Below, piece by piece: positions 7,531 through 35,606 of a DNA stretch of 64,000 bases; position 1 is the stretch's first letter; every line of letters begins with the position of its first letter. The notes beneath the pieces are model-generated. The model had not been told where the DNA came from and ran no database searches. It saw nothing but the letters and a program-made list of their open reading frames with translations. Position numbers and translations under genes: made by a program. The DNA is from Macrostomum lignano (Eukaryota), in NCBI GenBank assembly GCA_002269645.1, contig NIVC01000530.1, positions 1 through 64,000 of the forward strand. The letters are read 5' to 3'.

Positions 7531-7590
7531 CTCTACAGCAATTGAGTTGCAGGCCTTGCAGCTAGCTACTTTGAGATCATCAAACGAAAC

Positions 7591-7740: not shown

Positions 7741-9189
7741 ATCTTGTTTATAGATTACAGTTTTAGGCACAATAAATTTATATATGGATGAAACTTGGAG
7801 TAAGGATTAACATTAGACCTAATAAGTATAAATAAAATCAGTTCTAATTTATACAATTGCAATCCTTTAGAGTTGTTTAGTATGGATTATAAGTACTTTC
7901 TTTTAAACTGTCTGTGTCTGGTCTCACTACGCCATGGTTTACGTGGACCACCCGCTTAGACATTATATATCCCTCTCTCCACTGTCTTACCTTCAGAACG
8001 CTTGCGGGTTTCCTATTGGCTGCGGTCGTCCCATTGTTGGGGTGGATCTATCCTTTTAAGTGTTAACCAGCCAATTATAGAAAGGGAGGTCTGTCTGTCT
8101 GTCTGTTCCAACCCTATACTCCTGCACATGTGTTTACGTGGACCAAACAGACAGTGAGTATTAGGCTGACTGTTAATGCGTTCTTAGTTTTACTGGGACC
8201 GCAATCAAGTCGACCTTTTGCTAGAGAGTCAGAGACCCGATCACTAGCTAAAAGGCCCTTCTTAATTGCGTCCTCTTGATCAAATTTTTTGCATGTACAT
8301 GTATGAATGGTCCTTTTCAATTAGGTAAATTGCATCTTCGACTTTGCACTTGAAAGGCTGCAGCTTAGGATCTTCTTCTTCCAACATTGGAGGAGGATAG
8401 AACAGGATATCCCATAGTGTTTAGGATAGAATTGGCAAGCACTTAATTCATGAAGTTGCTATTTTCTTCTTGTGTAATGGTAGAGCCTCAGAAATTCGCA
8501 TTTGCACAGTGTGGCTATCAAGGACTCCTTGGCTATCAAGGAGCGAATTGGATTTCTTTACGTTGGTGTCTTACTCTGTGAGTCTGTGCTCAGAGTACGA
8601 TACCGGAATTGCTGGAATTGAGCTAATTAAATGGAGTTTAAAGTTTACTGTATCAAATTCATTTCGCATACGAGGTTTCAGAATTTTAAATTAACCTGCG
8701 TACCTACTTGAATGTCAAAGAACTGAACGCATATTGTTTTAAAGCCAGTAGCGGTCATAATATGATGCTAACATAGCCCTTTGTTCGTAAGGTAATGATC
8801 TGTAAAAAAATTCAGTTTTGCATTGAATCTATGCTTAATAACTGCTATACACAAACAGACACAAACAGACACAAACAGACACAAACAGACGATTTTCGAA
8901 AAATTTTCTAAAATTTTTCGGTTTACGTGGACCAGACTCGCTCGGTTTAGGTAGACCAGGCTGGAGGTCCAGCTAAACTGAAATGCAAATAACTTTGGAA
9001 AAAACCATGCTAGAAATTCCAAAATTGCTTAAGCCTTTCTTGACCCGCCTGACATTAATGTGAGATCCTCATCAACGTCTTAACCCCACCAGAGACAAAA
9101 TTATTTGGTGGTCCACTTAAGTGGTCTACCTACACCGGGTGGTCCAGCTAACGAGGCTACTGAACTTCCAAAAAGTCCACGTAAACACA

Positions 9190-11255
<2,066 letters not shown>

Positions 11256-11501
11256 AAGTAGTATCTGTTTCAAAATAGCTGTATTTATCTCCACAAAAAT
11301 ACGAGTACATTTATCACGAACGAAACATGACTGAACCAAATGCCTAACCAATGGTGGCATTCACTGGAATTCACGGGGGATCTGTCTCATGGAATCTTTC
11401 TAGATTATAGAGAAAATGATGGTCTAAAATGTGTTGAAATCTCTTTATCTCTTTAAATCTCCAATTAAATTTCTCTTAATTGGAGTTTTATGCAAGTCAA
11501 T

Positions 11502-17665
<6,164 letters not shown>

Positions 17666-18429: not shown

Positions 18430-18850
18430 TTTAGGGTGCCAAAATATAGCGCCTGCGGCGCCAAAATGAGTTCCAGCGGCGCCAAGATGAGTGTCCGTCT
18501 GCGGCGCCTAAATGAGTGTCCGTCTGGAGCGCCTAAATGAGTGTCTGTCTGGGGCGCCTAAATGAGTGCCAGCGGCGCCAAAATGAGTGTCCGTCTGGGG
18601 CGCCTAAATGAGTGTCTGTCTGGGGCGCCTAAATGAGAGCCAGCCGCGCCAAAATGCGTGTCTGTCTGGAGCGCCTAAATGAGAGCCAGCCGCGCCAAAA
18701 TGCGTGTCTGTCTGGGGCGCCTAAATGAGTGTCTGTCTGGGGCGCCTAAATGAGTCCCAGCGGCGCCAAGATGAGTGTCCGTTTGCGGCGCCAAAATGAG
18801 TGCCAGCGGCGCCAAAATGAGTGTCTGTCTAAGGCGCCAAAATAAGTGTC
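18430..18850. repeat. 25-bp minisatellite, left part (target of the LTR insertion)
   Basis: AAAATGAGTGTCCGTCTGCGGCGCC-type units, continuing at 35607. Confidence 0.95.
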
Positions 18851-20029
18851 TGTGATAAATAGGCAATTAGAGAATAGCATGCACGGTGAGCAATTATTTA
18901 GGCCCTAGACAAACCTACTTGGAGCGTTCGGAGATTTTAAAGCTATTAATCCTAATCGCCTATCGCCGGTCGGCGAGTTCTACCAGTCTTCTCCAATAGC
19001 CGCAGATACAGTACAAGAAAATAAAGAACACGAGGAAACACAAACCGAAAGATTTAGAGAGTGATAATCCTATTTCAAGAATAACTAACTTGATTGACGG
19101 TTTAATTTGATTAGCTGAGTTACAAGATTCAAGCAAACGGCGCAGATAACTAGAGTTGACAAAACGACAACAACGGTTAATAAATAATGATTATATACGC
19201 ACTGACAAGCGGATCTCAGCTGAAGAAGAAGAAGGCACCGAACACAGGACCACGGAGAAGACTCCTACCCCTGGCCTAAACCAGAACCTACTCTCAAACG
19301 AGAGCCCTGCCGAACCGACCGTTCAACGGAGTACCGACTAAGTTCTATCGGCACTGCCCTTCAGTGTAACACTGGGGCCCTCGGGGTCGAGGCCGCGTAC
19401 TTGATCAGATCCGACAGTCTCTATCTAACCGCGCTTGATAGCGACGACTTCAGACAGGAATTTGCCGTAGACGTTACGCCACAAGACTACTGCGGTTGGG
19501 CGGGAACAAAGATATGGACCGGGGGTGATGAAATCAAAACGCCTCAAAGCGCGAACCAACAAGGGGAGGAAAAGTCGGGCCACCGGCCGGGAACTGGACA
19601 AGACAAAACCGGGGAAAGGGAGCAATCGAGATCCGATTGCCAAAACACACTTTCATATATAGTCAGAGTCAAACCCTCACAAAACCCCCTCAAGCCGGGT
19701 GGTGGTCGTCTGGCCGGCCGCCTGCTTAAGCCGATTTGCACTGTGCCCGCGGCGCCGGGTAGAACTGAAACTTGCCGCGTGCCAGGGTCCAGGCCGGTTC
19801 TGATTGGCTGGCCGCGCAAAGCTGGGGTTCGCAGACAAAACTCAACCCTCCGCTGAGTCACAGATGGCGTCTGATTTCTAACCTGTTTACGCAAAATTGA
19901 TTCTAACTAACAAGAAAAAGTACACAAAAAACGCATGACTAAACTAAAGCAAAATAACAATTCAATAACAATATAGAAACTAATGCAGTCAATTTACAAC
20001 AAAATAAACGCAAAGATGCTCACACTACA
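18851..20029 (-). repeat. 3' LTR
   Basis: TGTGAT...ACTACA, matching 34428-35606. By eye only two 1-bp homopolymer indels were seen. Confidence 0.97.
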
Positions 20030-20045
20030 CTCCCCCCTCCTAAAA
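20030..20045 (-). other. Polypurine tract abutting the 3' LTR
   Basis: Minus strand TTTTAGGAGGGGGGAG lies directly before the LTR. Confidence 0.9.
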
Positions 20046-20798
20046 GAAATAGAGTACAAAAGAAGAAAAAACTTTTACAACAAATGAAAATTTGCGTCAT
20101 ATTCACGACATACTACTCCTAGTAAGCAAGTTGGTACAGTACAGCACGGAACGCATTCGCGGAAAGCAAAATTCAAAATTCAAGAACAAGAGCACTATAA
20201 CAAGGGTATAACTATAGCAACTGGGAAAAAAACGCAAATGGGAACACAACGTAATTCACTATGCGAAACATGACACGACAATGAAACGCAAACAAGAACA
20301 CAAATACAATTCTATGACACGGCAAAACGCAATCAAATACATAAGCAAAGTTACTATTCAATACGCGGCACGACAAAACACAAGCAAATCAATAAATAAA
20401 TCGAAACAAATCGCGACGGAACGCAACGTTTACGCAAACTATGGCACGACTTTCTACAATCGAAAACTTAAAGCAAAACGCATGCTACCCATCACCAAGA
20501 ACAAATAACGCGTTGACGCATTTTACAAAATTTTACGGAAGTCAATTAAATTACACATTTTCGACATGCAATTTTAACTTTAGCCGGCAAAATTTTTATT
20601 ACTCGCTGATTTAATTACCTGCACCTCCCCCCTCCTAAAAAGGTAGGGTGGGCGCTCCGACCCTCACTGTCTCCACAGCGGAATTCTTATCGCAATATAC
20701 CACGACGCTTATCTCTATCGGGTGCCTCGACGATAATAAAGTTCCACCCACGCTCCCGTGGCGGACTAACACTCAGCGCGCGAAAACTATCGCCCATT

Positions 20799-21180
20799 GG
20801 CTGCAGTTTACGGTCTTGCCCAGGACCAATCCCCGTGGCGAAATTCACCGCCCAATGGCTGCAGTTTTCTGTCGTGCCCAGGACAAGGGCTCCTTTCCTT
20901 CGCACTTCAGGCGTCTTGTGATTGCAGTTTAACGTCATGCCCATGACGTCGCTTTTCTATCTTCCTCTGACTTCTTTCGTCTCGTGGTTGCAGTTTAACG
21001 TCGTGCCAGGACGTCTTTTTTGTCGATTTCTGTCCTAGCGGTTGCAGTTTAACGTCTTGCCCAGGACGCATCATTAGTTAGTTTCTCTCCTAGCGGTTGC
21101 AGTTTAACGTCGTGCCCAGGACGCTTGCTCTAGTGAACTTCCTTTCCAGCGGCTGCAGTTTAACGTCGTGCCCAGGACGC
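20799..21180 (-). ncRNA. Array of seven 30-nt structured RNA motifs in the 3' UTR (coremin/xrRNA-like hairpins)
   Basis: Repeats start at 20799, 20857, 20920, 20986, 21040, 21095 and 21151, with 25-36-nt spacers. The stem shows covarying pairs. Function is inferred. Confidence 0.6.
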
Positions 21181-21770: not shown

Positions 21771-24700
21771 TCAATGATAACCGTATCGTTCCGGGGGTCT
21801 AATCGCCGCGCGGTTCCGCAGCCGCGGTATCCAGCTAACATTATTCATGCCTGCCCGCTGCGGGGGCGTACTGTGCACTGGGCTCAGATGCATTAAATTC
21901 GGTGGAGTGCGCACAGGAATCTGCCTGGCCTGAGACCCCGCAGGACTCGCCTGCGCCTGTTGGTTTGCATTGGCCGCTGTCTGAGTATTTTCCACTGTTC
22001 TATCTATATTACGTCCAGTAGCTTCGTGAGCTCTCTCACGTTGCAAAAATCTAATTCTCTCTGGCCTCTGAATCTCCACTTGGACTCTTTCTGACTCCTC
22101 CGAGCCGTCATCACTAGCACTTCCAGCTTCCTCTTCTCGATATTGACGCAACTTTTCTTCTGACAAGTAGCAGGGCTTTGTTCTGTCTACTGTCACTACG
22201 TCATGAATTCTGACGGGTTGCTCTATTCGGTCAACCTTTGGACCGGGTTCAATTTTTAAATTTTTTCCATTATTTCTTACTTCAAGCACTCGATACGGAC
22301 CTACCCATTTCCTATTCGTATCATAACAATTCTGCGTATTCGCTATCCAGACCAGGTCACCTGGCTGATAATACTGCTGGAATACTTTCGTGTCATAATT
22401 AGATTTCTGCCGCCTGACTGATATTTGCTGCTTTTCTCTGGCGATTCTATACGATTCCATGCACTTCTTATACAGATCATGTAAATGTTTATCACGGGTC
22501 TTGCGCTCCGGTGCAGGCAATCCGAGCTCAGCATCAACCGGTAGCCGCATCTTTCGACCATAGACTAATTCGAACGGGCTAAACTTATTACTTTCACTGA
22601 TTGTGCTTCGCTGAACCATCAAAGCGTGCGGAAGCACCTCATCCCATGCCAAACTGAGTTCACTCTGGGCTAATCTGATTCCATCTTTCACTACTCTGAC
22701 CATGCGCTCGCAGCGACCGTTTGCCTGCGGATGGTAGCTAGTAGTATGGCGCAAATCTATTCGGAAATTTTCGGTTAACGATTTCACTAATTCTGCAGTA
22801 AATGATGTACCTCTGTCTGATATGAATGCTTCAGGGGCACCATGCCGAGTGATCCACTCTGTGTACAGGGCCCAAGCTGTACTCTCAGCTGTACAATCTC
22901 TAAGCGCTTTCACCTCTAGCCAGCCCGTAAAGTGATCAACCATCAGCAGGAGGTACTTGTTCCCCCGTGCTGTGGCGTTGAACGGACCGGCGAAATCTAT
23001 ATGTACTTTCTCGCCCATGTAACTGCTGACTTCTGGTTCTAAAGGCGCTCGTGGCTTCGGCCCGTATTTCTTTCTTGTCTGGCACTCAGTACAAGTCTTA
23101 ATATATCTATCTAAGTTCGTTGAATAGTTTGGCCACCAAAATCTCTGTCGAATAAAATCTTTTGTCTTCGAAATACCGCCGTGAGCCATTTGATCGTGGT
23201 AAGCTCGAAACAACTGCTGCTCCAGGGCTTGATTTTCCGGCAGTACAATCTGCTCAAATTTTCGGCCTTCGGAATCTACCCAATTCCTGTAAATTATGTC
23301 ATTTTTCACTAATAGCTGCTCATAATCGCTAAATAAAGACTTATAACTGCGGCTCATTCCAACCCATTCATTTTTGGGCGGACAGGGCTCTCCCTGTCTG
23401 AGCTTTTGCTTGAGCAGCAGCAACTCTGGCTGGCTCTCCTGCAGTTCTACAATTCCCGCTGGCGTATCGATATTAATTGCACCGCAGTGGACTGTTGCTG
23501 TCTTCGTCGCACTGCAAGTGGGGCATTCCTCATGGTAGCGTTTCGGGGGACCATCCCGCTGAGGTCTGCGACTCAGGGCGTCTGCGTTACCATGGGCGAT
23601 CCCTTGGCGGTACTGAATTGCAAAGTCATATTCTTCCATTCTCGAGATTACTTCAAATTGATCAAACTGCTCAAGAATCATATTCCATCTGCCTAGCATG
23701 CCTTTTGCACCGTGGCACTTGCGTAGCCATTGGAGGGCCGCGTGGTCTGTCCTGACCTTGAAACGACGGCCGACCAGATAAGGCCGGTAATGTTCTAAGA
23801 AATATATCAGCGCAAACATTTCCTTCATCGTAGTGCAGTAATTCAACTGATGCTCATTCAACGGATGCGAAGCATAGGCTATCACTTTTTCTTCCCCATC
23901 TTGCTCTTGTAATAAATTTCCACCTATAGCTACGTCACAGGCGTCGACATCGAGGATGAACGGTCCCGCGTCGCTATCGAACCTGGGGTAGCTCAGTACA
24001 GGTGCGCTTACTAGCTTCTGCTTTAATAGATCGAATGCCTTCTGGCAACTGTCATCCCACTTATACTTGACTTCTTTTCTAGTTAAATTATTCAAGGGCT
24101 CACTTATTCGCGCAAAGTCTTTAATAAATCTGCGATAGTAGCCGGCTAAGCCTAAGAATCCGCGCAGCTCAGAGATATTCTCTGGCCGGGGCCATGTTTG
24201 GACTTTTTCTATCTTATCTTTGCTGGTATAGATACCGTGTTGACAGACGGTGTGCCCTAGGAGGGTGACTTCTTTCCGAAACAGAAAGGTCTTCTCTGGC
24301 TTGATTTTCATTCCAGCATCTGCTAATCGAGAGAAAATTAATTCTAAATTACTGAGCATTTCTTCGAAATTCTTGCCTGTGCAAATAACATCATCTAGGT
24401 AGAGTAAGGCAAACTTATAAGCGTAATCGCCTAAGATCTTCTGCATTATACGCTGAAAACAAGCGGGTCCGTTCGTGACTCCGAAAGGCAAAACTTTCCA
24501 CTGGAACAGGCCATCATGGGTTCGAAACGCTAATTTCTCGCGGTCAGTCTCTCTGACCTTCACTGACCAATAAGCGCCGACCATGTCTAGGGTGCTAAAG
24601 TACATGTTGCCTGCCAGGGATTCCAGCGATTCTTGAATTAGCGGTAACGGAAAACTGTCCTTCTTAGTCTTATTATTTAACTGTCTGAAATCACAGCAAA

Positions 24701-26552
24701 ATCTGAATTCTCCGGACTTCTTCCGGGCGAGAACAATAGGGCAACTCCACTCAGATTCTGAGGGCTCAATCAAATCGTGCTCTAATAGCTGCTGCACATG
24801 CCCGCTAACAAATTCTCGTTGCTCAGGGCTTTGCTTGCGCAGGGGAATTCTGACTGGAATTTCGTCGGTAGTCTCGATCTTGAATTCGCCCATCTGGGTC
24901 TTGCCGATGTCCCACTGATCCTTCGAAACTATATTTTGATAACGATGTAATAATTCAATTACTTTTCTCTTCTGAGCCTCACTTAAATCGGTCTCGTTTA
25001 AGCGGAATTGCTCCCTAAGTCTATCAGCTTCTTGCACCGTAATTGCTGCCTTCGATTGCTTCTGCGCACCTACTTCTAAATCAGTTTCTGACATTGCGAA
25101 AAGTTCTACTTCTTCCTTCAGCGGTTGATACTGCGCCACTACTTCATCCTTATGAATTGTCTGTGCCTCTTCTGTCAGGTTCATTAATCTAACGTAAGTT
25201 TCGCCGAATTCGTCCAATCTAGTAATAGCTTTGGCTACTAATGGCTCATCTTTCTCGCTAATTTGACTGCGGCCTGAAATGAAGCCGAGTTCTGCAGTTT
25301 CTGGAGTATCTTTACATTTAGCCTTGACATAAATTTCGCTCATCGGTGCTATAGATACTTTCTTGACTACTTGCAGTAGGACGCAACGCGTTTCATCACT
25401 CGTTGTTACAAGCGGAATTCTGCGATCACTAAATTCTAAGGATTTTCCTGCTATATCTAATTTAATTTTATGCCTAGTTAACAAGTCGATGCCTATTATT
25501 GATGATGTTAGTAAGCCTTCAGCAACATAGAATGGGTGCGTAATCTCGCAGTCCCCAAATCTGACGCGCAATGCTACTTGGCCTAATAAATTTGAAGTCT
25601 GGCCATTGGCGGATCGCATATTCACTGAGCATGGCTTCAGACTATGATTGGCTGGATAGAGGCGTTGATATAATTTATTATCAATTAGGCAATTTGAGGC
25701 GCCGGTATCAACTAATATTTTTTCGCTTAGTCCGTTAATCTGGCTATCGAGGAATAATCCTGAATTCACTAATTGGCTAGATATGTCTGCTTCTACGGTC
25801 TTCTCTCGCTTCTCTGTTGCTTTCTTTTCAGCTGCCACATCTCGCTGGATGGCTGTCTCTAACTTCCTTAATTCTTGCTTCATTTCCCTAAGTTCAGCTC
25901 TAAGTTCTGCTGTCGTGGCACTCTTGTCAGGTTCTTCTTTCGTTGATTCTTCTTGGACTTTCTCTACCAAGCATTGGCGCAAGTCCTTCAATTCGGTTCT
26001 TAGATCTGATAATTCTTTTACTACTTTCGGTTCGTCTGATGAAGCTTTCTTTCCTTCTACTTCACTAAGTCGCAAGTCTATGCTGTTTAATGCACTTCTC
26101 TGAGCTGCTGCAGCTTCGCTTCGTTTCTCTAATTCTTCTGTCAACGCCTCTGACTGTCTAGCTAAGCTCGCTGACTTCTGTTTGTCAATTTCTGCTAATC
26201 TGCGTTCCTCGTTTGAGCAAATTTTAACATTGACCGCTCTCTGTTTCCTACTATGAGTAGTATCGTTAGTGCGAATAAATTTTACTGTCGCCCTCTGGCG
26301 CAGAAAATGCATAATTTCGTAATCAGTTGCTATATTAGTATTAGTCACATGAAAGAAAATATCTCTATTATTGCTATCTCGCAGGAATCCGTAGCCTCTG
26401 TAATAATTATACCAAACTAAATTGCCATATTCTACATTGACTGAGCTGTCTTGCTGGTCCTCTACTGCTGCAGCTCTTCTATTGGGAGTGAATCGGTTTA
26501 GTGGCTGGGGGCGGTTGGCCCTCCCTTGGTGCCGCCCCGTCGGTAGTTTAAA
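21771..26552 (-). CDS. pol: Pol frame: cold-shock domain, coiled coil, aspartic protease, RT, RNase H, integrase with GPY/F-like tail
   Basis: The frame is stop-free from the slippery site at 26552. Motifs: LVDTGAS, YLDD, DHAALQWL, HDQMAHGG..CTEC (HHCC), HIDF..SDRG..CER (DDE), WVGPYRV. The CSD lies upstream of the ORF-track start at 26348. Confidence 0.95.
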   Translation of the reverse strand, partial: FKLPTGRHQGRANRPQPLNRFTPNRRAAAVEDQQDSSVNVEYGNLVWYNYYRGYGFLRDSNNRDIFFHVTNTNIATDYEIMHFLRQRATVKFIRTNDTTHSRKQRAVNVKICSNEERRLAEIDKQKSASLARQSEALTEELEKRSEAAAAQRSALNSIDLRLSEVEGKKASSDEPKVVKELSDLRTELKDLRQCLVEKVQEESTKEEPDKSATTAELRAELREMKQELRKLETAIQRDVAAEKKATEKREKTVEADISSQLVNSGLFLDSQINGLSEKILVDTGASNCLIDNKLYQRLYPANHSLKPCSVNMRSANGQTSNLLGQVALRVRFGDCEITHPFYVAEGLLTSSIIGIDLLTRHKIKLDIAGKSLEFSDRRIPLVTTSDETRCVLLQVVKKVSIAPMSEIYVKAKCKDTPETAELGFISGRSQISEKDEPLVAKAITRLDEFGETYVRLMNLTEEAQTIHKDEVVAQYQPLKEEVELFAMSETDLEVGAQKQSKAAITVQEADRLREQFRLNETDLSEAQKRKVIELLHRYQNIVSKDQWDIGKTQMGEFKIETTDEIPVRIPLRKQSPEQREFVSGHVQQLLEHDLIEPSESEWSCPIVLARKKSGEFRFCCDFRQLNNKTKKDSFPLPLIQESLESLAGNMYFSTLDMVGAYWSVKVRETDREKLAFRTHDGLFQWKVLPFGVTNGPACFQRIMQKILGDYAYKFALLYLDDVICTGKNFEEMLSNLELIFSRLADAGMKIKPEKTFLFRKEVTLLGHTVCQHGIYTSKDKIEKVQTWPRPENISELRGFLGLAGYYRRFIKDFARISEPLNNLTRKEVKYKWDDSCQKAFDLLKQKLVSAPVLSYPRFDSDAGPFILDVDACDVAIGGNLLQEQDGEEKVIAYASHPLNEHQLNYCTTMKEMFALIYFLEHYRPYLVGRRFKVRTDHAALQWLRKCHGAKGMLGRWNMILEQFDQFEVISRMEEYDFAIQYRQGIAHGNADALSRRPQRDGPPKRYHEECPTCSATKTATVHCGAINIDTPAGIVELQESQPELLLLKQKLRQGEPCPPKNEWVGMSRSYKSLFSDYEQLLVKNDIIYRNWVDSEGRKFEQIVLPENQALEQQLFRAYHDQMAHGGISKTKDFIRQRFWWPNYSTNLDRYIKTCTECQTRKKYGPKPRAPLEPEVSSYMGEKVHIDFAGPFNATARGNKYLLLMVDHFTGWLEVKALRDCTAESTAWALYTEWITRHGAPEAFISDRGTSFTAELVKSLTENFRIDLRHTTSYHPQANGRCERMVRVVKDGIRLAQSELSLAWDEVLPHALMVQRSTISESNKFSPFELVYGRKMRLPVDAELGLPAPERKTRDKHLHDLYKKCMESYRIAREKQQISVRRQKSNYDTKVFQQYYQPGDLVWIANTQNCYDTNRKWVGPYRVLEVRNNGKNLKIEPGPKVDRIEQPVRIHDVVTVDRTKPCYLSEEKLRQYREEEAGSASDDGSEESERVQVEIQRPERIRFLQRERAHEATGRNIDRTVENTQTAANANQQAQASPAGSQARQIPVRTPPNLMHLSPVHSTPPQRAGMNNVSWIPRLRNRAAIRPPERYGYH
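26226..26426 (-). CDS. Cold-shock domain (OB fold, 67 aa) at the N-terminus of the Pol frame
   Basis: GNLVWYNYYRGYGFLRDSNNRDIFFHVTNTNIATDYEIMHFLRQRATVKFIRTNDTTHSRKQRAVNV. It matches the CSD hallmarks G..W(F/Y)N, RNP1 (K/R)G(F/Y)GF, RNP2 D(V/I)F.H and terminal A.NV. Confidence 0.88.
26484..26552 (-). promoter_or_regulatory. -1 programmed ribosomal frameshift signal (gag to pol)
   Basis: U UUA AAC in the gag frame (26546-26552), a 7-nt spacer, then stem GGGGCGG/CCGCCCC. Loop GGGAG is complementary to downstream CUCCC. The pol frame is exactly -1 and opens just before the heptamer. Confidence 0.85.
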
Positions 26553-27996
26553 GAATTTCTTCTAGTTGGACAGTCTCTAGCCAGGTGAGTTTCTTCGCCG
26601 CACTCATAACAGGCCTTTCTCGCATTTGGCGCGTTCGCCCCCGAAGGTTTGAACCTGTCATTGGCCCCTCCGGCCTCGTAACCAAAGCGTGACGGGCGTG
26701 TCATGGCGGGCCTGACAAATGGCGAAGACTGCCTATTATAGGGTCTCGAGTAACTGCTCATGTGATGCTGTGGCCGAAAGCTATTCTGAGGCTGCACTGG
26801 TGCCTGTGGCCTATAGCTTGGGTTCATTTGTCTATGGGCAAACCTAGGTTGCCATTGTCGGCTGATTTTCCATGCAAGAATGGCATTCTTGCACTCTTTT
26901 GCGTGCAGGAATGGATGTCTATGGTAAAATCTCACTGAAAAAGCATTAGGCGCAGAAATGCATTCCTGCACGGTTTTGTGCATTCCTGCACGATGAATCA
27001 TCCGACAATGGAATTCCTTCACGTTCACTCGTGCGTGAAGGACATCGTGCACTCGTGCGCTAGCGCGCACTCGTGCAGATGTCATTCCCGCACTCGTGAC
27101 CGTGCAGGAATATATCATTGCCTGTAGTCGAACTGAGGCTGATGATTCTGGTACGATTGGTACTGCGAAGGATAGTTGCTCGGGGAAGCAAACTGAGGTC
27201 CAAATGACTGGTGGCCTTGCCCCGTGCTGGGTGCTGCTACAGGCGTCTCTTCCTTCCCTACTTGAGCCGTTAACGTATTTGAGCCCTCTTGCTTCCTTCT
27301 ATTCTTTTGGCTACCTGGGTTTGCGAGTTCTTCGAGGATCTCCTCATTCTTAGCTGCAGTCAATAAATCTTGAGTCTGATACTTCGATTCATGGGTTCTA
27401 CGATAGGCAATAACTGCGCGCCTGACTTTATAATTTGCTATGCCGGCTTCAAATCGTTCAGAAACTCGCTCTCGAGCCTGATTCTCTAGTCCTGCTTTCC
27501 TAACTAATTCAACTAGTGCGTCGTAAAATTCTTCTAATGATTCGTCTTCCTTCTGCTTGCGGTTCATCAGCTCTAGCTTCGCTTCTTCCTTCTGTCCTAC
27601 GGGCTTAAATTTGTCCTTTAAAGTCTTTTCGATGCTTTCGAAAGATTCGGTGCTCGCTAGGCCTAAGTTAATGTAAACCTTGTAGGCGTCTTCGTCTAGG
27701 AGCGACAATAGTTGATACACTTTAGCCGATTCGTCTATACTGTTGCCTTGACAGTAGTTGTTGAAGATTCTTAGAAACAATTCGAAATCTGAGCCAAGTC
27801 GGTATGGCTTGGGCTTTGCTACGCTGTTATGCGACTTCAAAATCACTCTAGGTTCGGGATTTTCGGTTTCCATTCTTCTTATGCGATCCTGCAGTTCTCT
27901 CACTACTGTTCTCAAATGTTCGGCCTCATCTATTTCGCCTTCGTTCCTAATCTCAGCTGACTCCGATTCTTGACTATTTTCTCCGTCCTGCGCCAT
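26498..27996 (-). CDS. gag: Gag (capsid-like region plus CCHC knuckle), interrupted by a 258-bp insertion
   Basis: Retrotransposon gag-like region (KQKEDESLEEFY) in 27115-27996 and CYECGEETHLARDC in 26498-27118. Removing the insert and one CAATG copy restores the in-frame reading DYRQWQPRF. Confidence 0.88.
26858..27115. mobile_element. 258-bp palindrome-rich insertion (MITE-like) with a 5-bp TSD
   Basis: CATTG at 26853-26857 and 27116-27120, with multiple internal inverted repeats. Confidence 0.7.
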
Positions 27997-28013: not shown

Positions 28014-31000
28014 TCCCATATACTAAAAATGAAAATCTTGCTTGCTTGTAATCGATTAGAGAAAAAATGGCTTAACCGATTTTCATGAGACTTGCACTGT
28101 TCGATCAGAAATTTTCCCGTGACGGTACATGCATCTTGGCTAAGAAATTGCTCCATGTTAAAGCGATTAAATATTCGAAAAACATGCTTTTTTGCAAAGG
28201 TCAAGCAAACTTTTCGACTTGAAATGCATTGTAAGAATGCTAGAGAAAAAACTGACTGGTTGAATTCTGATTCTGAAATAGATTACATCATAACTGAATT
28301 GTAACTCCGACTTGAATTGCGTCACAGTATTGAAAATGCAGTGTGGAAGCGTAGCACCAGACTTTATTTAGATTGCGCAACAATATTGTTAACTGATACT
28401 GACTGACTGAGAAATTGATTATGTAATAACTGCCTCGTGTGATTTACTCTATGCTTGGAGTTTTGAAACTTATAATTATAAGTGCTGAATTCATGTTATC
28501 AAAACGATGAGAGCTAGCCTAGAGGTAAACAGACTGAACTGCTAAATGCAGAAACGATGGTTCGAATTTTTAGAGAGTAGAGTTTTTTTAATTAAAGCTT
28601 TTTAACGCCAGGAAAACTAAAAAAATCATAAAAGCGTCATGTAAAAAATCATAGAAGCGTCATGTAAAAAGCATAGAAGTGTCATGTAAAAAATCGTGGA
28701 AGCATCATGTAAAAAGCATAGAAGCGTCATGTAAAAAATCATAGAAGCGTCATGTAAACAATCATAGAAGCGTCATGTAAACAATCATAGAAGCGTCATG
28801 TAAACAATCATAGAAGCGTCATGTAAAAAATCGTAGAAGCGTCATGAAAAAATCATTAAAGCGTCATGTAAAAATCATAGAAGAGTCATGTAAAAAATCA
28901 TAGAAGCATCGTGTAAACAATCATAGAAGCGTCATGTAAAAAATCGTAAGAGCGTAATATAAAAATCATAGAAGCGTCATTTAAAAAATCATAGAGGCGT
29001 CATATAAAAATCAAAAAAACGTCATTTAAAAAATCATAGAAGCGTCATGTAAACAATCATAGAAGCGTCATGTAAACAATCATAGAAGCGTCATGTAAAA
29101 AATCATAGAAGCGTCATGTAAACAATCATGGAAGCGTCATGTAAACAATCATAGAAGCGTAATGTAAAAATCATAGTAGCGTCATGTAAAAAATCATAGA
29201 AGCGTCATGTAAAAAGCATAGAAGCGTCATGTAAAAAATCATAGAAGCGTCATGTAAACAATCATAGAAGCGTCATGTAAAAATCATAGAGGTGTCATGT
29301 AAAAATCATTGAAGCGTCCTGCAGAAATCGTAGAAGCGTCATGAAATAATCATAGAAGCGTCATGTAAAAAATCAAAGAAGCGTCATGTAAAAAATCATA
29401 GAAGCGTCATGTAAAAAATCATAGAAGCATCGTGTAAACAATCATAGAAGCGTCATGTAAAAAATCATAGAAGCGTCATGTAAAAAATCGTAGAAGCGTC
29501 ATTTAAAAAATCATAGAAGCGTCATGTAAACAATCATAGAAGCGTCATGTAAAAAATCATAGAAGCGTCATGTAAAAAATCATAGAAGCGTCATGTAAAA
29601 AATCATAAAAGCGTCATGTAAAAAATCATAGAAGCATCGTGTAAACAATCATAGAAGCGTCATGTAAAAAATCATAGAAGCGTCATGTAAAAAATCATAG
29701 AAGCGTCATCTAAAACATCATAAAAGCGTCATGTAAAAAATCGTAGAAGCGTCATTTAAAAAATCATAGAAGCGTCATATAAACAATCATAGAAGCGTCA
29801 TGTAAACAATCATAGAAGCGCCATGTAAACAATCATAGAAGCGCCATGTAAACAATCATAGAAGCTTCATGTAAACAATCATAGAAGCGTCATGTAAACA
29901 ATCATAGAAGAGTCATGTAAAAAATCATAGAAGCGTCATGTAAAAAATAATAGAAGCGTCGTGTAAACAATCATAGAAGCGTCATGTAAACAATCAGAGA
30001 AGCGTCATGTAAAAAATCATAAAAGAGTCATGTAAAAAATCGTAGAAGCGTCATATAAAAATCATAGAAGCGTCATTTAAAAAATCATAGAAGCGTCATG
30101 TAAACAATCATAGAAGCGTCATGTAAACAATCATAGAAGCGTCATGTAAACAATCATGGAAGCGTCATGTAAGAAATCATAGAAGCGTCATGTAAAAAAT
30201 CGTAGAAGTGTCATGTAAAAAATCGTGGAAGCATCATGTAAAAAGCATAGAAGTGTCATGTAAAAAATCATAGAAGCGTCATGTAAACAATCATAGAAGC
30301 GTCATGTAAACAATCATAGAAGCGTCATGTAAACAATCATAGAAGCTTCATGTAAAAAATCGTAGAAGCGTCATGAAAAAATCATTAAAGCGTCATGTAA
30401 AAATCATAGAAGCGTCATGTAAAAAATCATAGAAGCATCGTGTAAACAATCATAGAAGCGTCATGTAAAAAATCGTAAGAGCGTAATATAAAAATCATAG
30501 AAGCGTCATTTAAAAAATCATAGAGGCGTCATATAAAAATCAAAAAAACGTCATTTAAAAAATCATAGAAGCGTCATGTAAACAATCATAGAAGCGTCAT
30601 GTAAACAATCATAGAAGCGTCATGTAAAAAATCATAGAAGCGTCATGTAAACAATCATGGAAGCGTCATGTAAACAATCATAGAAGAGTCATGTAAAAAA
30701 TCATAGAAGCGTCATGTAAAAAGCATAGAAGCGTCATATAAACAATCATAGAAGCGTCATATAAAAAATCATAGAAGCGTCATGTAAAAATCATAGAAGC
30801 GTCATGTAAAAAATCATAGAAGCGTCATGTAAAAAATCATAGAAGCGTCATGTAAAAATCATAAAAGCATCGTGTAAACAATCATAGAAGCGTCATGTAA
30901 AAAATCATAGAAGCGTCATGTAAAAAATCATAGAAGCGTCATATAAACAATCATAGAAGCGTCATGTAAACAATTATAGAAGCGTCATGTAAAAATCATA

Positions 31001-33916
31001 GAAGCGTCATGTAAAAAATCATAGAAGCGTCGTGTAAACAATCATAGAAGCGTCATGTAAAAAATCATAGAAGCGTCATGTAAAAAATCATAGAAGCGTC
31101 ATCTAAAACATCATAAAAGCGTCATGTAAAAAATCGTAGAAGCGTCATTTAAAAAATCATAGAAGCGTCATATAAACAATCATAGAAGCGTCATGTAAAC
31201 AATCATAGAAGCGCCATGTAAACAATCATAGAAGCGTCATGTAAACAATCATAGAAGCGTCATATAAAAATCATAGAAGCGTCATTTAAAAAATCATAGA
31301 AGCGTCATGTAAACAATCATAGAAGCGTCATGTAAACAATCATAGAAGCGTCATGTAAAAAATCAAAGAAGCGTCATGTAAACAATCATGGAAGCGTCAT
31401 GTAAAAATTATAGAAGCGTCATGCAAACAATCATAGAAGCGTCATGTAAACAATCATAGAAGCTTCATGTAAAAAATCATAGAAGCGTCATGTAAAAAAT
31501 CATAGAAGCGTCATCTAAAACATCATAAAAGCGTCATGTAAAAAATCGTAGAAGCGTCATTTAAAAAATCATAGAAGCGTCATATAAACAATCATAGAAG
31601 CGTCATGTAAACAATCATAGAAGCGCCATGTAAACAATCATAGAAGCGTCATGTAAAAAGCATAGAAGCGTCATGTAAACAATCATAGAAGCGTCATGTA
31701 AACAATCATAGAAGCGTCATGTAAAAATCATAGAGGTGTCATGTAAAAATCATTGAAGCGTCCTGCAGAAATCGTAGAAGCGTCATGAAATAATCATAGA
31801 AGCGTCATGTAAACAATCATGGAAGCGTCATGTAAAAATCATAGAAGAGTCATGTAAAAAATCATAGAAGCATCGTGTAAACAATCATAGAAGCGTCATG
31901 TAAAAAATCGTAAGAGCGTAATATAAAAATCATAGAAGCGTCATTTAAAAAATCATAGAGGCGTCATATAAAAATCAAAAAACGTCATTTAAAAAATCAT
32001 AGAAGCGTCATGTAAACAATCATAGAAGCGTCATGTAAACAATCATAGAAGCGTCATGTAAACAATCATAGAAGCGTCATGTAAACAATCATAGAAGCGT
32101 CATGTAAAAAATCATAGAAGCGTCATGTAAAAATCATAGAAGCGTCATGTAAAAATCATAGAAGCGTCATGTAAAAAATCATAGAAGCGTCATGTAAAAA
32201 ATCATAGAAGCATCGTGTAAACAATCATAGAAGCGTCATGTAAAAAATCATAGAAGCGTCATGTAAAAAATCATAGAAGCGTCATCTAAAACATCATAAA
32301 AGCGTCATGTAAAAAATCGTAGAAGCGTCATTTAAAAAATCATAGAAGCGTCATATAAACAATCATAGAAGCGCCATGTAAACAATCATAGAAGCGCCAT
32401 GTAAAAATCATAGAAGCATCGTGTAAACAATCATAGAAGCGTCATGTAAAAAATCGTAAGAGCGTAATATAAAAATCATAGAAGCGTCATTTAAAAAATC
32501 ATAGAAGCGTCATGTAAACAATCATAGAAGCGTCATGTAAACAATCATAGAAGCGTCATGTTAAAAATCATAGAAGCGTCATGTAAAAAATAATAGAAGC
32601 GTCATGTAAACAATCATAGAAGCGTCATTTTAAAAATCATAGAAGCGTCATGTTAAAAATCATATAAGCGTCATGTAAACAATCATCGAAGCGTCATCTA
32701 AAAATCATAGAAGCGTCATGTAAAAAATCATAGAATCGTCATGAAAAAATCATAGAAGCGTCATTTAAAAACTAATGAAAGTGTCATTTAAAAAATTAAG
32801 AAGCATCATAGTAGAATAAAAGAAGCGTCATGTCAGACATGAAAGGTGTCATGGAAAAATTAAATGCAGCTATAATGCTGTGCTGGGGAGAAAAACTGAG
32901 ACGTCAAGGCTCTCAGAGAATAACTGAGATTACGGGGGGGGGGGTTTCTGAGATGTCAAAGCAAAAGTCAGAAGCTAATTCAAAGTTCATGTACTTTACT
33001 CAATTTTTTTTATTGCATTCTTTGTTGGCTCGCCACGGGAGGCGCTGATAGAAGAAGAGTCATGTAAAAAATAAAAGTAGCACTATGTATACATAAAAGA
33101 AAAGTCATGTCGAAGTTAAAAGATTCATTTGGGAATTGCTACGATGTCAAAGCTTGGTGGAAATCGTTATAGTGCTGTGATTCTTAAAGAAGGAATCACT
33201 AAAATGTCAAGGCTTAGGGGAGAAGAATTGCTGAGATTTCAAGGCTTTATGTTGGGTTAAAGTTAGGTTTAGGTCAGGTGTGGGTTGAGGGTTATATTTT
33301 ATCGAGTTTCAAGGTTAGCAGGGGATTTTTCAGATTTCAAGGTTTATGGGCGCCATCGCTGACATGTTAAGGCTTGCGGGGGAATAGCTGAGATGTCAAG
33401 GCTCACGGGGGTATAAATGAGATTTCAAGGCTAAAGTCAGAAGCTACATGTAGTTTATTGAAAACTTTTTATTACATTATTTGATGCCTCCTCAGGGGAG
33501 GGATCGCTGATTAAAAAAGCGTAATGTAAAAAATAAAAGAAGCTTCATGTCGAAGTTAAGATATTCATTTGGGAATCCCTACGATGTCGAGGCTTGCAGG
33601 GAATCGCTATAATGCTGTAGTAGTGCTATAATGACTCTTAAAGAGAATTACTGAAATTTCAATGCTTTAGGGTTAGGTTAGGGTTAGGGTTAGAAGGTTG
33701 ACAGATATTTTTAGATTTCCAAGGCTTATTGGGGGCATGGCTGAGATGTCAAGGGGGGAAGTTGATATGTTAAAGCTTGTGGGGGGGAATTACTGACATG
33801 TCAAGGCTTACAAGGTTTGATAGGAGATTTTTTAAGATTTCAAGGATACATGTAGCTTATTAAAAAAACGTGTATTGCATTTCTTTGGCTCCCCAACGGG
33901 GGGCGTAGATTGCTAG
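28014..33916 (+). mobile_element. Non-autonomous Helitron (5.9 kb) nested in the retrotransposon leader
   Basis: 5' A|TC (TCCCATATACTAAAAATGAAAATCTTGCTTGCTTG...CCGATTTT, similar to Lep1-type ends). 3' hairpin GCTCCCC-AAC-GGGGGGC, then CTAG|T. No TSD. Confidence 0.8.
28615..32830. repeat. 22-23-bp minisatellite (AAAMAATCATAGAAGCGTCATGT)n, about 4.2 kb, inside the Helitron
   Basis: Direct reading. Confidence 0.98.
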
Positions 33917-34425: not shown

Positions 34426-34427
34426 CT

Positions 34428-35606
34428 TGTGATAAATAGGCAATTAGAGAATAGCATGCACGGTGAGCAATTATTTAGGCCCTAGACAAACCTACTTGGA
34501 GCGTTCGGAGATTTTAAAGCTATTAATCCTAATCGCCTATCGCCGGTCGGCGAGTTCTACCAGTCTTCTCCAATAGCCGCAGATACAGTACAAGAAAATA
34601 AAGAACACGAGGAAACACAAACCGAAAGATTTAGAGAGTGATAATCCTATTTCAAGAATAACTAACTTGATTGACGGTTTAATTTGATTAGCTGAGTTAC
34701 AAGATTCAAGCAAACGGCGCAGATAACTAGAGTTGACAAAACGACAACAACGGTTAATAAATAATGATTATATACGCACTGACAAGCGGATCTCAGCTGA
34801 AGAAGAAGAAGGCACCGAACACAGGACCACGGAGAAGACTCCTACCCCTGGCCTAAACCAGAACCTACTCTCAAACGAGAGCCCTGCCGAACCGACCGTT
34901 CAACGGAGTACCGACTAAGTTCTATCGGCACTGCCCTTCAGTGTAACACTGGGGCCCTCGGGTCGAGGCCGCGTACTTGATCAGATCCGACAGTCTCTAT
35001 CTAACCGCGCTTGATAGCGACGACTTCAGACAGGAATTTGCCGTAGACGTTACGCCACAAGACTACTGCGGTTGGGCGGGAACAAAGATATGGACCGGGG
35101 GTGATGAAATCAAAACGCCTCAAAGCGCGAACCAACAAGGGGAGGAAAAGTCGGGCCACCGGCCGGGAACTGGACAAGACAAAACCGGGGAAAGGGAGCA
35201 ATCGAGATCCGATTGCCAAAACACACTTTCATATATAGTCAGAGTCAAACCCTCACAAAACCCCCCTCAAGCCGGGTGGTGGTCGTCTGGCCGGCCGCCT
35301 GCTTAAGCCGATTTGCACTGTGCCCGCGGCGCCGGGTAGAACTGAAACTTGCCGCGTGCCAGGGTCCAGGCCGGTTCTGATTGGCTGGCCGCGCAAAGCT
35401 GGGGTTCGCAGACAAAACTCAACCCTCCGCTGAGTCACAGATGGCGTCTGATTTCTAACCTGTTTACGCAAAATTGATTCTAACTAACAAGAAAAAGTAC
35501 ACAAAAAACGCATGACTAAACTAAAGCAAAATAACAATTCAATAACAATATAGAAACTAATGCAGTCAATTTACAACAAAATAAACGCAAAGATGCTCAC
35601 ACTACA
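34428..35606 (-). repeat. 5' LTR
   Basis: Near-identical to 18851-20029. Confidence 0.97.

What the first reader, a model, noticed from the sequence alone, without database searches (positions are those of the whole stretch)
20799..21180. Seven spaced, covarying 30-nt RNA hairpin motifs in the 3' UTR, resembling the coremin Xrn1-resistant element
Seen on the sense (minus) strand: consensus NNGUC-CUGGGCAH-GACNN-WAAACUGCARCC, seven times, with 25-36-nt variable spacers (CRISPR-like layout). The stem covaries. Pair 2 is C-G in five copies, U-A in one and G-C in one. The outer pair is G.U (3), A-U (2) or U.G (2), and the wobble pairs only work on the sense strand, which implies an RNA structure. 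The loop UGGGCA could pair with downstream UGC(AR)CCR as a pseudoknot. Recalled from the literature and to be verified: the beny/cucumovirus coremin motif GUCCGAAGACGUUAAACUAC stalls Xrn1/4. The copy at 21040 reads GUCC-UGGGC-AAGACGUUAAACU-GC, a 13-nt identical run. Inference: tandem xrRNA-like blocks that produce nested decay-resistant RNAs, or multivalent protein-binding sites.
Basis: partly seen in the sequence, partly recalled or inferred. Interest (0 to 1): 0.9.

Follow-up and report, generated by a model that had tools for sequence, protein, structure and literature searches.

The report
Coremin-like RNA pseudoknot array in retrotransposon
Seven spaced copies of a 31-base RNA pseudoknot closely resembling a plant-virus nuclease-blocking motif sit in the untranslated tail of a young flatworm retrotransposon, and the same module occurs unannotated in phages, bacteria, RNA viruses and protists.

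Summary
Seven copies of a ~31-nt module lie at 20798-21180 on the minus strand only (0 expected by chance). Modules are 83% alike; spacers are 50% alike, which equals random.

The window comes from Macrostomum lignano. The array lies between pol and the polypurine tract of a 16.8-kb Ty3/gypsy-type LTR retrotransposon whose LTRs are 99.8% identical.

The coremin resemblance is real. Copy 3 carries 19 of the 20 published coremin bases in order, with four extra loop bases. The same positions vary or stay fixed as in coremin mutagenesis.

The module also has over 100 exact-pattern hits each in viral contigs and prokaryote genomes, and 60 for the flatworm-type tail in metagenomes. It occurs in phage intergenic regions, between the replicase and coat genes of tombus-like viruses, in protist contigs and upstream of bacterial Rrf2 genes. 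Divergent phage copies show compensatory changes that establish an H-type pseudoknot. No Rfam family or paper found describes it.

It is not a canonical coremin. The loop misses the published consensus, an essential A is G in all copies, and the second hairpin is weak or absent. Nuclease resistance is inferred, not shown.

Verdict: a new variant of a known kind, of high interest.

The parts
21150..21180 (-). Module copy 1: hairpin GCGUC/GACGU with loop CUGGGCAC, then U-AAAC-UGCAGCCG
   Evidence: model R1 E=3.2e-9
21094..21124 (-). Module copy 2
   Evidence: R1 E=3.9e-9
21039..21069 (-). Module copy 3. Closest to coremin: 13-nt identical run, 19 of 20 positions in order.
   Evidence: R1 E=2.7e-9
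20985..21014 (-). Module copy 4. One loop G is missing and no second hairpin of 2 bp or more follows. Probably the most decayed copy.
   Evidence: R1 E=2.6e-6
20919..20949 (-). Module copy 5. The loop-closing C..N positions are A-U here, giving a 7-bp stem and a UGGGCA hexaloop. The tail is UGCAAUCA.
   Evidence: R1 E=1.1e-7
20856..20886 (-). Module copy 6. Pair 4 is U-A. Retained in the sister element.
   Evidence: R1 E=8e-8
20798..20828 (-). Module copy 7. Pair 4 is G-C. Retained in the sister element, where the outer U.G is U-A.
   Evidence: R1 E=2e-8
20837..20852 (-). Extra 4-bp hairpin (GGCG..CGCC) in the spacer after copy 6. Identical in the sister element.
   Evidence: read; alignment
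20780..20793 (-). Extra 3-bp hairpin (GCG..CGC) after copy 7
   Evidence: read; repeat family D1
21771..26348 (-). pol ORF (protease, reverse transcriptase, RNase H, integrase). Uninterrupted, 1525 codons.
   Evidence: 98% identical to Macrostomum lignano BOX15_Mlig028235g4
26498..27996 (-). gag region (Retrotrans_gag, zf-CCHC). Read in two frames, so one frame interruption.
20030..20045 (-). Polypurine tract directly upstream of the 3' LTR
18851..20029 (-). 3' LTR with TG..CA ends
34428..35606 (-). 5' LTR, 99.83% identical to the 3' LTR over 1180 bp. The primer-binding site follows at about 34408-34427.
28620..32860 (-). 23-bp-period tandem array inside the element's 5' untranslated region. 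Absent from the sister copy.

Best explanation
The seven repeats are tandemly amplified copies of a self-folding ~31-nt RNA module in the sense transcript of a young Ty3/gypsy-type LTR retrotransposon of Macrostomum lignano. They lie between pol and the polypurine tract.

Each module has three parts:
- A short hairpin with an invariant GUC/GAC core, extended by covarying pairs.
- Pairing of the last loop bases, G-C-A, with the U-G-C that follows an invariant AAAC.
- Together these form a compact H-type pseudoknot with the coremin architecture.

My committed mechanism is that each module acts as a protein-independent, directional roadblock to enzymes moving 5' to 3' along the RNA. An XRN1-type exonuclease is the prime candidate; scanning ribosomes or helicases are also possible. 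Decay from the 5' end would then stop at successive modules. This would leave a nested set of stable 3' RNAs carrying the rest of the untranslated region, the polypurine tract and U3-R. Several copies would give redundancy.

Shown here: the repeats, sense-strand stem covariation, stronger conservation of modules than spacers, the pseudoknot (by covariation in relatives), and membership of a cross-domain motif family close to coremin.

Inferred: nuclease resistance and any consequence for the element.
For: 1. Array and selection. There are seven copies against 0 expected. Modules are 83% identical and spacers 50%, the same as shuffled spacers.

2. Stem. Pair 4 is C-G, U-A or G-C. The outer pair is G.U, A-U or U.G, and the sister copy turns U.G into U-A.

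3. Coremin match. 19 of 20 published bases occur in order. Positions 12-14 vary among the seven copies while AAACUGCA is invariant. This matches mutagenesis, in which U13U14 are tolerant and A15-C21 essential.

4. Register. The published Watson-Crick coremin variants pair the loop with the spacer in the same register. Relative to coremin, the loop A-to-C and spacer A20-to-G changes together create a C-G pair.

5. Family.
- The pattern has over 120 hits in viral contigs, and the unspecified GUC arm is invariant in them.
- Pair 4 shows six pair types.
- Unconstrained variants show loop and tail changing together. On alignment A1, 94% of cells are paired against at most 46% when slid, and 4 of 6 pseudoknot pairs have double changes.

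6. Occurrence in RNA viruses, 16-17 nt after the replicase stop, rules out a DNA-level role for the family.

7. One phage contig carries, twice, the module followed 11 nt later by a hexaloop coremin of the published type.

8. Tandem 2-3-copy arrays of the flatworm-type variant occur in eukaryote-like metagenome contigs.

9. Coremin itself stalls Xrn1 and scanning ribosomes, and also occurs in tandem.
Against: - The loop CUGGGCAH breaks the YGAD/YGNNAD rule. As an octaloop its second base is U, not G. As the hexaloop UGGGCA its fifth base is C, not A.
- A20, essential in BNYVV, is G in all copies. Only A20U and A20C have been tested.
- The second hairpin, required for Xrn1 resistance, is 3 bp in copies 6-7, 2 bp in copies 1-3 and 5, and absent in copy 4. 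It also competes for the CC that would extend the pseudoknot.
- Phage-type modules show no downstream hairpin at all.
- In the window the pseudoknot beyond 3 bp needs a 2-nt bulge.
- The whole array has no thermodynamic signal (z=0.04).
- The sister element has only two modules.
- Bacterial contexts suggest that a translation-linked role is possible for the family. There the module overlaps the stop of a small ORF upstream of Rrf2 genes.
- No expression or RNA-end data were available.
Confidence: 0.4

Rival explanations
1. The same pseudoknot fold, but a different job. The module would be a general cis-regulatory RNA acting on translation or termination, or binding a universal factor or small ligand. 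Its similarity to coremin would reflect a shared fold, not shared nuclease resistance. In the retrotransposon it would modulate what happens to ribosomes, or to the RNA, downstream of the coding region.
For: - In bacterial genomes the module overlaps the stop codon of a conserved ~25-codon ORF. It lies 10-45 nt upstream of Rrf2-family regulators in 9 of 10 cases tested.
- In phages it starts a median of 10 nt after the upstream stop codon and 11-48 nt before the next start.
- Phage-type copies lack the second hairpin that coremin needs for Xrn1 stalling.
- Coremin itself also stalls scanning ribosomes and promotes frameshifting.
Against: - In the window the first module is 590 nt from the pol stop, and no ORF follows.
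- Genes downstream of the module in phages are unrelated to each other. Short distances may only reflect compact genomes.
- A ligand or factor common to phages, RNA viruses, protists and a flatworm element is hard to name.
Confidence: 0.3
2. A neutral by-product. One or two functional or captured modules (copies 6-7) were amplified by the tandem duplication that is rampant in this genome. The extra copies would have no function of their own.
For: - The window is full of tandem arrays.
- The element's own 5' region holds a 4-kb satellite that its sister lacks.
- The sister has only copies 6-7, with an ORF where copies 1-5 lie.
- Copies 1-3 still share spacer similarity.
- Copy 4 has lost a loop base.
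Against: - Spacers have diverged to random-level identity while modules stay at 83%.
- For the most recent pairs, modules are 94-97% identical against 60-67% for spacers.
- Stem changes are compensatory.
- Arrays of 2-3 modules recur independently in unrelated eukaryote-like contigs.
Confidence: 0.12
3. A multivalent binding platform for a protein of the element or the host. Examples are Gag zinc-knuckle binding to the G-rich loops for packaging, or an export or stability factor.
For: The sites are repeated, evenly spaced hairpins with exposed G-rich loops in a retroelement RNA. The element encodes a CCHC zinc knuckle.
Against: The identical module occurs in phages, bacteria, tombus-like viruses and protist contigs that lack such proteins. 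The loop bases are engaged in a covariation-supported pseudoknot rather than exposed.
Confidence: 0.1
4. A DNA-level array of binding sites, acting as enhancer or insulator in the manner of the binding-site array in Drosophila gypsy.
For: Spaced repeats of a short conserved motif with variable spacers inside a gypsy-type element resemble such arrays (own knowledge).
Against: - Stem positions change identity while keeping complementarity.
- Five of the seven outer pairs are G.U or U.G and are valid only on the sense strand.
- The family occurs in RNA viruses, which have no DNA stage.
- Pseudoknot covariation in relatives points to RNA.
Confidence: 0.03

Closest known systems
Coremin motif (xrRNA-C) of beny- and cucumoviruses and other RNA viruses (PMC6546385, PMC10520033)
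   Same: - GUC/GAC hairpin of 3-5 bp whose pairs can be swapped.
- The spacer G/N-U-U-A-A-A-C-U-x-C at the same distance from the hairpin.
- The tolerant positions (12-14) and the fixed positions (15-21) coincide.
- An A follows position 21, and then a small hairpin can form.
- Location in a 3' untranslated or intergenic region.
- Occurs in tandem copies.
- Octaloops are known to work in coremin.
   Different: - The loop is C-UGGGCA-N rather than Y-G-(N)n-A-D.
- Position 20 is G, not A.
- The loop can pair canonically with positions 19-21 and beyond.
- The second hairpin is marginal.
- The host is a metazoan LTR retrotransposon rather than an RNA virus.
- There are seven copies rather than one to three.
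- Nuclease resistance is untested.
Watson-Crick coremin variants (xrRNA-WCC: laboratory hits and Sanxia picorna-like virus 5; PMC10321173)
   Same: [quoted passage not shown] The AAA stretch upstream is conserved.
   Different: Those variants have a tetraloop starting with an essential G and a 3-bp second stem at positions 18-20. Here the loop is 8 nt and starts with C, and the second stem starts at position 19. That stem runs up to 6 bp in phage copies, and is 3 bp plus a bulged extension in the flatworm copies.
Luteovirus-type H-type frameshifting pseudoknots (compared with coremin in PMC10321173)
   Same: Compact two-stem pseudoknot with a one-base first loop and an A-rich third loop of about 7 nt.
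   Different: Those lie inside coding regions after a slippery site, and the paper reports that they do not stall Xrn1. No slippery site or overlapping frame exists here.
Tandem xrRNAs of flavivirus 3' UTRs (for example PMC13556198)
   Same: Several structured roadblocks in series in a 3' untranslated region would give nested RNAs.
   Different: The flavivirus elements have an unrelated, larger three-way-junction ring fold, and they occur as two copies, not seven.
Tandem repeats in untranslated regions of Ty3/gypsy elements (hypervariable 3' regions of plant elements; the binding-site array of Drosophila gypsy). Own knowledge.
   Same: Repeat arrays arise readily in the non-coding parts of such elements, and their copy number differs between sister copies.
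   Different: Those arrays are DNA satellites or DNA binding sites without a covarying RNA fold. Here a 31-nt structured module is conserved against random spacers and is shared with viruses and cells.

Membership tests
Coremin-type xrRNA (xrRNA-C) | 5' hairpin of 3-5 bp in which pairing matters more than sequence, closed by C-G | tested here: met
   GUC/GAC core with a C-G closing pair in all 7 copies. The outer pairs covary. Pair 4 shows six pair types in relatives.
Coremin-type xrRNA (xrRNA-C) | Loop consensus YGAD, or YGNNAD for hexaloops. G at loop position 2 and A before the last base are required. | tested here: not met
   The loop is CUGGGCAH, so position 2 is U. Read as the hexaloop UGGGCA (copy 5), position 5 is C. 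The last base is C in 4 copies, and C fails in coremin.
Coremin-type xrRNA (xrRNA-C) | 10-nt spacer with A15-C21 (AAACUAC) essential and positions 12-14 tolerant | tested here: inconclusive
   The length and AAACU-C are identical in all 7 copies, and positions 12-14 vary (GUU, AGA, CGU). But position 20 is G in all copies. A20G has never been assayed. It is coupled to a loop change that creates a C-G pair.
Coremin-type xrRNA (xrRNA-C) | Second hairpin directly after the spacer. At least 2 G-C pairs suffice, preferably with a stable tetraloop. | tested here: inconclusive
   Read:
- GCC-AUUG/AAUG-GGC in copies 6-7.
- CC-GCUA-GG in copies 2-3.
- CC-GCU-GG in copy 1.
- UC-ACAA-GA in copy 5, which is one double change.
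- None in copy 4.
This hairpin competes with the bulged pseudoknot extension. Hairpin enrichment is weak in eukaryote-type relatives (p=0.03) and absent in phage-type relatives.
Coremin-type xrRNA (xrRNA-C) | Stalls Xrn1/XRN4 just 5' of the first hairpin without protein | not testable with these tools
   No RNA-end, expression or biochemical data were accessible.
Coremin-type xrRNA (xrRNA-C) | Lies in the sense strand of a 3' untranslated or intergenic region of a replicating RNA | tested here: met
   It lies between the pol stop and the polypurine tract on the element's sense strand.
Watson-Crick coremin (xrRNA-WCC) | [quoted passage not shown] | tested here: met
   G-C-A pairs with U-G-C in all 7 copies. 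The pairing covaries in relatives: GUA/UAC, and the six-pair helix in A1.
Watson-Crick coremin (xrRNA-WCC) | Tetraloop whose first base is an essential G | tested here: not met
   The loop is 8 nt and starts with C.
UGGGCA-loop pseudoknot family defined here (viral, prokaryote and metagenome contigs) | nGUC-C-UGGGCA-N-GACn'-NN-AAAC-UGC, with hairpin plus loop-tail pseudoknot | tested here: met
   A model built only from viral-contig copies scores the 7 window copies at E=3e-9 to 3e-6, with the next hit at E=0.2. Caveat: those copies were fetched with a pattern taken from the window. The window copies belong to the tail subtype UGC-AN-CC, shared with 60 metagenome loci.
DNA binding-site array of the gypsy insulator type | Sequence-specific duplex DNA sites, with no need for intramolecular complementarity or strand asymmetry | tested here: not met
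   There are compensatory stem changes and sense-only wobble pairs. The family is present in RNA viruses.
Small self-cleaving ribozymes (hammerhead, twister, HDV-like, pistol, hatchet) | Match to the curated covariance models, and a conserved catalytic core beyond a 30-nt hairpin | tested here: not met
   There are no Rfam hits on the window region at E up to 10. There are also none on 45 related loci: 29 scanned at the gathering score and 16 at E up to 1. No conserved column lies outside the 30-nt block within 80 nt either side.

The most novel reading that the evidence does not exclude
The flatworm array is one outpost of a previously undescribed, cross-domain class of ~30-nt coremin-like pseudoknots. 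The class is present in DNA phages, bacterial and archaeal genomes, tombus-like RNA viruses, protist genomes and a metazoan retrotransposon. It acts as a universal, protein-independent roadblock to 5'-to-3' RNA-translocating enzymes: Xrn1 in eukaryotes and RNase J-type enzymes in prokaryotes. On this reading the retrotransposon would use a seven-module array to make nested decay-resistant RNAs analogous to the subgenomic RNAs of flaviviruses. That would be the first xrRNA-type device in a transposable element.
Probability: 0.3. Interest if true: 0.95.

Novelty: new variant of a known kind. Interest (0 to 1): 0.85.

Why it matters
Exoribonuclease-resistant RNAs are so far a hallmark of RNA viruses. 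In the papers read here, coremin was sought only among RNA viruses. If the module in this retrotransposon works like coremin, three things would follow:
- Transposable elements, and by the distribution found here also DNA phages and cellular genes, would use the same minimal fold.
- 'xrRNA' would change from a viral speciality into a general RNA-stability device.
- Existing flatworm RNA data would directly test how a retroelement transcript escapes or exploits 5'-to-3' decay.

Independently of function, the natural variants found here provide covariation evidence for the loop-spacer pseudoknot. That pairing has been proposed for coremin, but no coremin structure has been solved.

Tried and rejected
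- Rfam 15 was scanned on the window region (E up to 10) and on 45 related loci: 29 at the gathering score and 16 at E up to 1. No family covers the module.
- MFE folding of the whole array gave z=0.04, which is uninformative for small pseudoknots.
- Full-text search for the motif strings returned only chance primer and miRNA matches.
- Searches for xrRNA or coremin in phages or retrotransposons found nothing relevant.
- The class-3 plant xrRNA paper (PMC12397905) describes a different fold and does not mention coremin.
- I looked for more sister elements:
  - pol has only one close database relative.
  - The sister's extra ORF has no Pfam family and no homologue.
  - Three distant pol relatives carry no module, but their contigs have almost no 3' region.
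- A ribozyme reading and a phage-promoter reading were rejected. Nothing is conserved outside 30 nt, the pseudoknot covaries, and RNA viruses carry the module.
- A coding reading of the window copies was rejected, because upstream open frames through the modules are at most ~18 codons (median).
- A second-hairpin requirement could not be settled.
- MAFFT misplaced the one-base gap of copy 4, so I counted stem pairs for the seven copies directly from the sequences.
- Early notebook entry 1 lists raw ORF bounds from the ORF listing. I wrote it before I had seen that gag is interrupted.

Full report
WHAT IS THERE

On the minus strand, 21180 to 20798, seven copies of a ~31-nt module are separated by 24-35-nt spacers. 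A 25-nt pattern allowing two mismatches finds six of them, against 0.00 expected from shuffles. The seventh, copy 4, lacks one loop G. Nothing similar occurs elsewhere in the window or on the other strand.

TRF reports a 55-nt period over copies 1-4. Neighbouring copies still share 60-67% of their spacers, so the array grew by tandem duplication. Overall, modules are 83% identical pairwise. Spacers are 50% identical, which is the value for shuffled spacers (0.48).

Next to an invariant GUC/GAC core, the pair is C-G in five copies, U-A in one and G-C in one. The next pair out is G.U in three, A-U in two and U.G in two. Copy 5 turns the loop-closing mismatch into A-U.

CONTEXT

The array lies inside a Ty3/gypsy-type LTR retrotransposon on the minus strand.
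- gag (Retrotrans_gag, zf-CCHC) and a 1525-codon pol (protease, RT, RNase H, integrase) are present.
- The LTRs are 18851-20029 and 34428-35606, 99.83% identical over 1180 bp.
- The LTR ends are TG..CA. A polypurine tract abuts the 3' LTR, a primer-binding site follows the 5' LTR, and the flanking duplication is GACA.
- pol is uninterrupted. gag is read in two frames, which counts as one interruption.
- pol is 98% identical to a Macrostomum lignano protein, so the host is that flatworm.

The array therefore lies in the untranslated internal region of the genomic RNA. It starts 590 nt after the pol stop and ends about 770 nt before the 3' LTR.

A SISTER COPY

The M. lignano contig NIVC01000738 (L001) has pol and the 3' region 97% identical to the window. 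It carries only modules 6 and 7.
- Where the window has modules 1-5, the sister has an 857-bp GC-rich segment with an intact 240-codon ORF. That ORF has no Pfam family and no homologue.
- The 100 nt spanning modules 6-7 differ at one base. The change turns the outer U.G of module 7 into U-A.
- Module number is therefore variable between copies of the family.

THE COREMIN COMPARISON, FROM THE PAPERS

PMC10520033 prints the 20-nt coremin motif. Window copy 3 contains 19 of those 20 bases in order. It has four extra loop bases and a 13-nt identical run (0 expected).

Published requirements:
- A first hairpin of 3-5 bp, in which structure counts more than sequence.
- A loop of YGAD or YGNNAD. Hepta- and octaloops can work.
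- A 10-nt spacer in which U13U14 tolerate change but A15-C21 do not.
- A second hairpin directly downstream, needing at least two G-C pairs.

The seven window copies vary at exactly positions 12-14 (GUU, AGA, CGU) and are invariant over AAACUGCA.

They deviate from coremin in three ways:
- In the loop. As an octaloop, position 2 is U. As the hexaloop UGGGCA, position 5 is C.
- At position 20, which is G instead of A.
- In the second hairpin, which is weak.

PMC10321173 shows that coremin variants with canonical loop-spacer pairing resist Xrn1. In the window modules the loop's G-C-A can pair with U19-G20-C21. Relative to coremin, the loop change and the A20G change together create a C-G pair.

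THE MODULE IS NOT PRIVATE TO THE FLATWORM

A pattern specifying only the loop, GAC and AAACUGC gave over 120 loci in IMG/VR.

In the 105 unique IMG/VR instances:
- The unspecified GUC arm is invariant, and nothing else within 80 nt is conserved.
- The pair flanking the core is canonical or wobble in 79 of 105, with six pair types.
- The tail is mostly UGCC(C)(A), the complement of the loop.
- The sites are intergenic and co-oriented with neighbouring genes. They start a median of 10 nt after the upstream stop and 11-48 nt before the next start, or 5-10 nt before tRNA genes. The downstream genes are unrelated to each other.

Other settings:
- Three viral contigs are tombus-like RNA viruses, one with a viral RdRp and all three with a tombus-type coat protein. 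The module lies 16-17 nt after the stop of the upstream replicase-position ORF.
- A metagenome scan for the flatworm-type tail (UGC-A-N-Y-C) gave 60 loci. Several hold 2-3 modules at a 35-nt period followed by a plain hairpin. They lie among intron-free eukaryotic genes such as HECT ligase, E1 enzyme, DEAD-box helicase, PP2C and a Tc1-like transposase.
- A scan of species-representative prokaryote genomes gave over 119 loci in many phyla. In many of these the module overlaps the stop of a conserved ~25-codon ORF. It precedes an Rrf2-family regulator in 9 of 10 cases tested.
- The canonical coremin patterns also have over 100 hits each in IMG/VR, many on 20-60-kb contigs.
- One such contig carries, twice, the UGGGCA-type module followed 11 nt later by a hexaloop coremin of the published type.

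Rfam 15 has no family for any of these. The paper library holds nothing on coremin-like motifs outside RNA viruses.

THE FOLD

A search constraining only GUC, GAC and AAAC recovered divergent phage copies in which the loop and the tail change together. Examples are UGAGUA/UGCUCA, UAAGCA/UGCUUA, UGGCUA/UGGCCA, UGGACA/UGUCCA and UAAACA/UGUUUG.

On a 78-sequence alignment:
- 94% of cells pair, against at most 46% when the partners are slid.
- Four of the six pseudoknot pairs show double changes.
- No shuffle reaches the observed covariation score.

This establishes an H-type pseudoknot:
- First stem of 3-4 bp.
- First loop of one base.
- Second stem of up to 6 bp.
- One base.
- Third loop of 7 nt ending in AAAC.

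Eukaryote-type relatives show the three pairs next to AAAC covarying, as GUA/UAC.

In the window those three pairs are invariant. Further pairing needs a 2-nt bulge, and it competes with the mini second hairpin. This cannot be resolved from seven related copies.

A covariance model built only from viral copies scores the seven window copies at E=3e-9 to 3e-6, with the next hit at E=0.2. The viral copies were fetched with a window-derived pattern. The model therefore tests consistency, not independence.

INTERPRETATION

A DNA-level role is excluded for the family, because RNA viruses carry it. A role tied to one protein is unlikely given the host range.

The only experimentally characterised relative is coremin. 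It blocks Xrn1, blocks scanning ribosomes and promotes frameshifting without protein. I therefore commit to a directional roadblock, with exonuclease resistance as its likeliest use in the retrotransposon, at 0.4 confidence.

Weaknesses:
- The loop and position-20 rules are broken.
- The second hairpin is marginal here and absent in phage copies.
- The array as a whole shows no folding-energy signal.
- The bacterial contexts hint at a translation-linked role.
- No expression data could be consulted.

The main rival, at 0.3, keeps the fold but assigns another function. Neutral amplification (0.12), a protein-binding platform (0.1) and DNA sites (0.03) follow.

NOVELTY

The array is a new variant of a known kind. 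It has the coremin architecture with a canonical loop-spacer helix, in a metazoan LTR retrotransposon, in seven copies. The wider family appears to be undescribed.

Noticed in passing
L001 14691-15413 (sister element, M. lignano NIVC01000738.1): Where the window has modules 1-5, the sister copy has an 857-bp GC-rich segment with an intact 240-codon ORF. The ORF has no Pfam family and no database homologue. The window keeps only the first few codons of it.
   Followed up: partly
IMG/VR loci L002-L121: The same 30-nt module has over 120 exact-pattern hits in viral contigs, mostly phage-like DNA contigs. It is intergenic and co-oriented with genes. It starts about 10 nt after a stop codon and 11-48 nt before the next start, or just before tRNA genes. 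Some phage loci hold many copies with covarying loop and tail, for example L029 with at least 8. It is not in Rfam.
   Followed up: yes
IMG/VR loci L185-L400: The canonical coremin patterns (tetraloop and hexaloop, as printed in PMC10520033) each have over 100 hits in viral contigs, many on 20-60-kb contigs that look like DNA phages. The papers read here searched only RNA viruses.
   Followed up: partly
L034 (minus strand, offsets 690/726 and 1758/1794): A phage contig carries, twice, a UGGGCA-type module followed 11 nt later by a hexaloop (CGAAAU) coremin-type motif. The two types occur side by side.
   Followed up: partly
L050, L061, L066: Three tombus-like RNA virus contigs (RdRP_3 and/or Viral_coat) carry the module 16-17 nt after the stop of the replicase-position ORF, upstream of the coat gene.
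   Followed up: partly
L126, L130, L134, L136, L148, L177, L178 and others among L122-L181: Eukaryote-like metagenome contigs carry 2-3 modules of the flatworm tail type at a 35-nt period, followed by a plain hairpin (GUCCCCGGAAAGGAC). Neighbouring genes include HECT ligase, E1 enzyme, DEAD-box helicase, PP2C and a Tc1-like transposase. The source organisms were not identified.
   Followed up: partly
L409-L527 (bacterial and archaeal genomes): Over 119 species genomes in many phyla carry the module; no Gammaproteobacteria appear in the rows shown. In many it overlaps the stop of a conserved ~25-codon ORF (..RPVAHC-x-E/D-GC..SWA or SWARR). It lies 10-45 nt upstream of an Rrf2-family regulator in 9 of 10 cases tested. 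A GYAGU complementary to ACUGC sits 10 nt upstream in 25 of 121.
   Followed up: partly
window 28620-32860: A 4.2-kb tandem array of 23-bp period lies inside the element's 5' untranslated region. It is absent from the sister copy, whose 5' region joins gag directly.
   Followed up: partly
window 18435-18853 and 35607-36633: The element is flanked on both sides by the same 25-bp satellite, so it inserted into a satellite array. The apparent target duplication is GACA.
   Followed up: partly
window 20625-20640: A second copy of the polypurine-tract sequence lies about 600 nt upstream of the real one. It is conserved in the sister copy together with nearby hairpins (for example CCACGGGAGCGUGG at about 20745-20760).
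   Followed up: no
window 134-7540, 9185-11256, 12636-14144, 16723-17410, 42275-44216, 55970-57165: The window is dominated by tandem arrays. They include a 237-bp unit repeated 31 times, (ACAG)n over 2 kb, and units of 20, 39, 40, 26 and 21 bp. Tandem duplication is evidently very active in this genome.
   Followed up: no
window 46493-47187 and 49564-50270: A direct repeat pair of about 700 bp at 91% identity may be the LTRs of another, older element.
   Followed up: no
L294 525-623: A skipping-rope RNA (Rfam RF02924, 53.9 bits) lies about 135 nt upstream of a hexaloop coremin-type motif in a phage contig.
   Followed up: no
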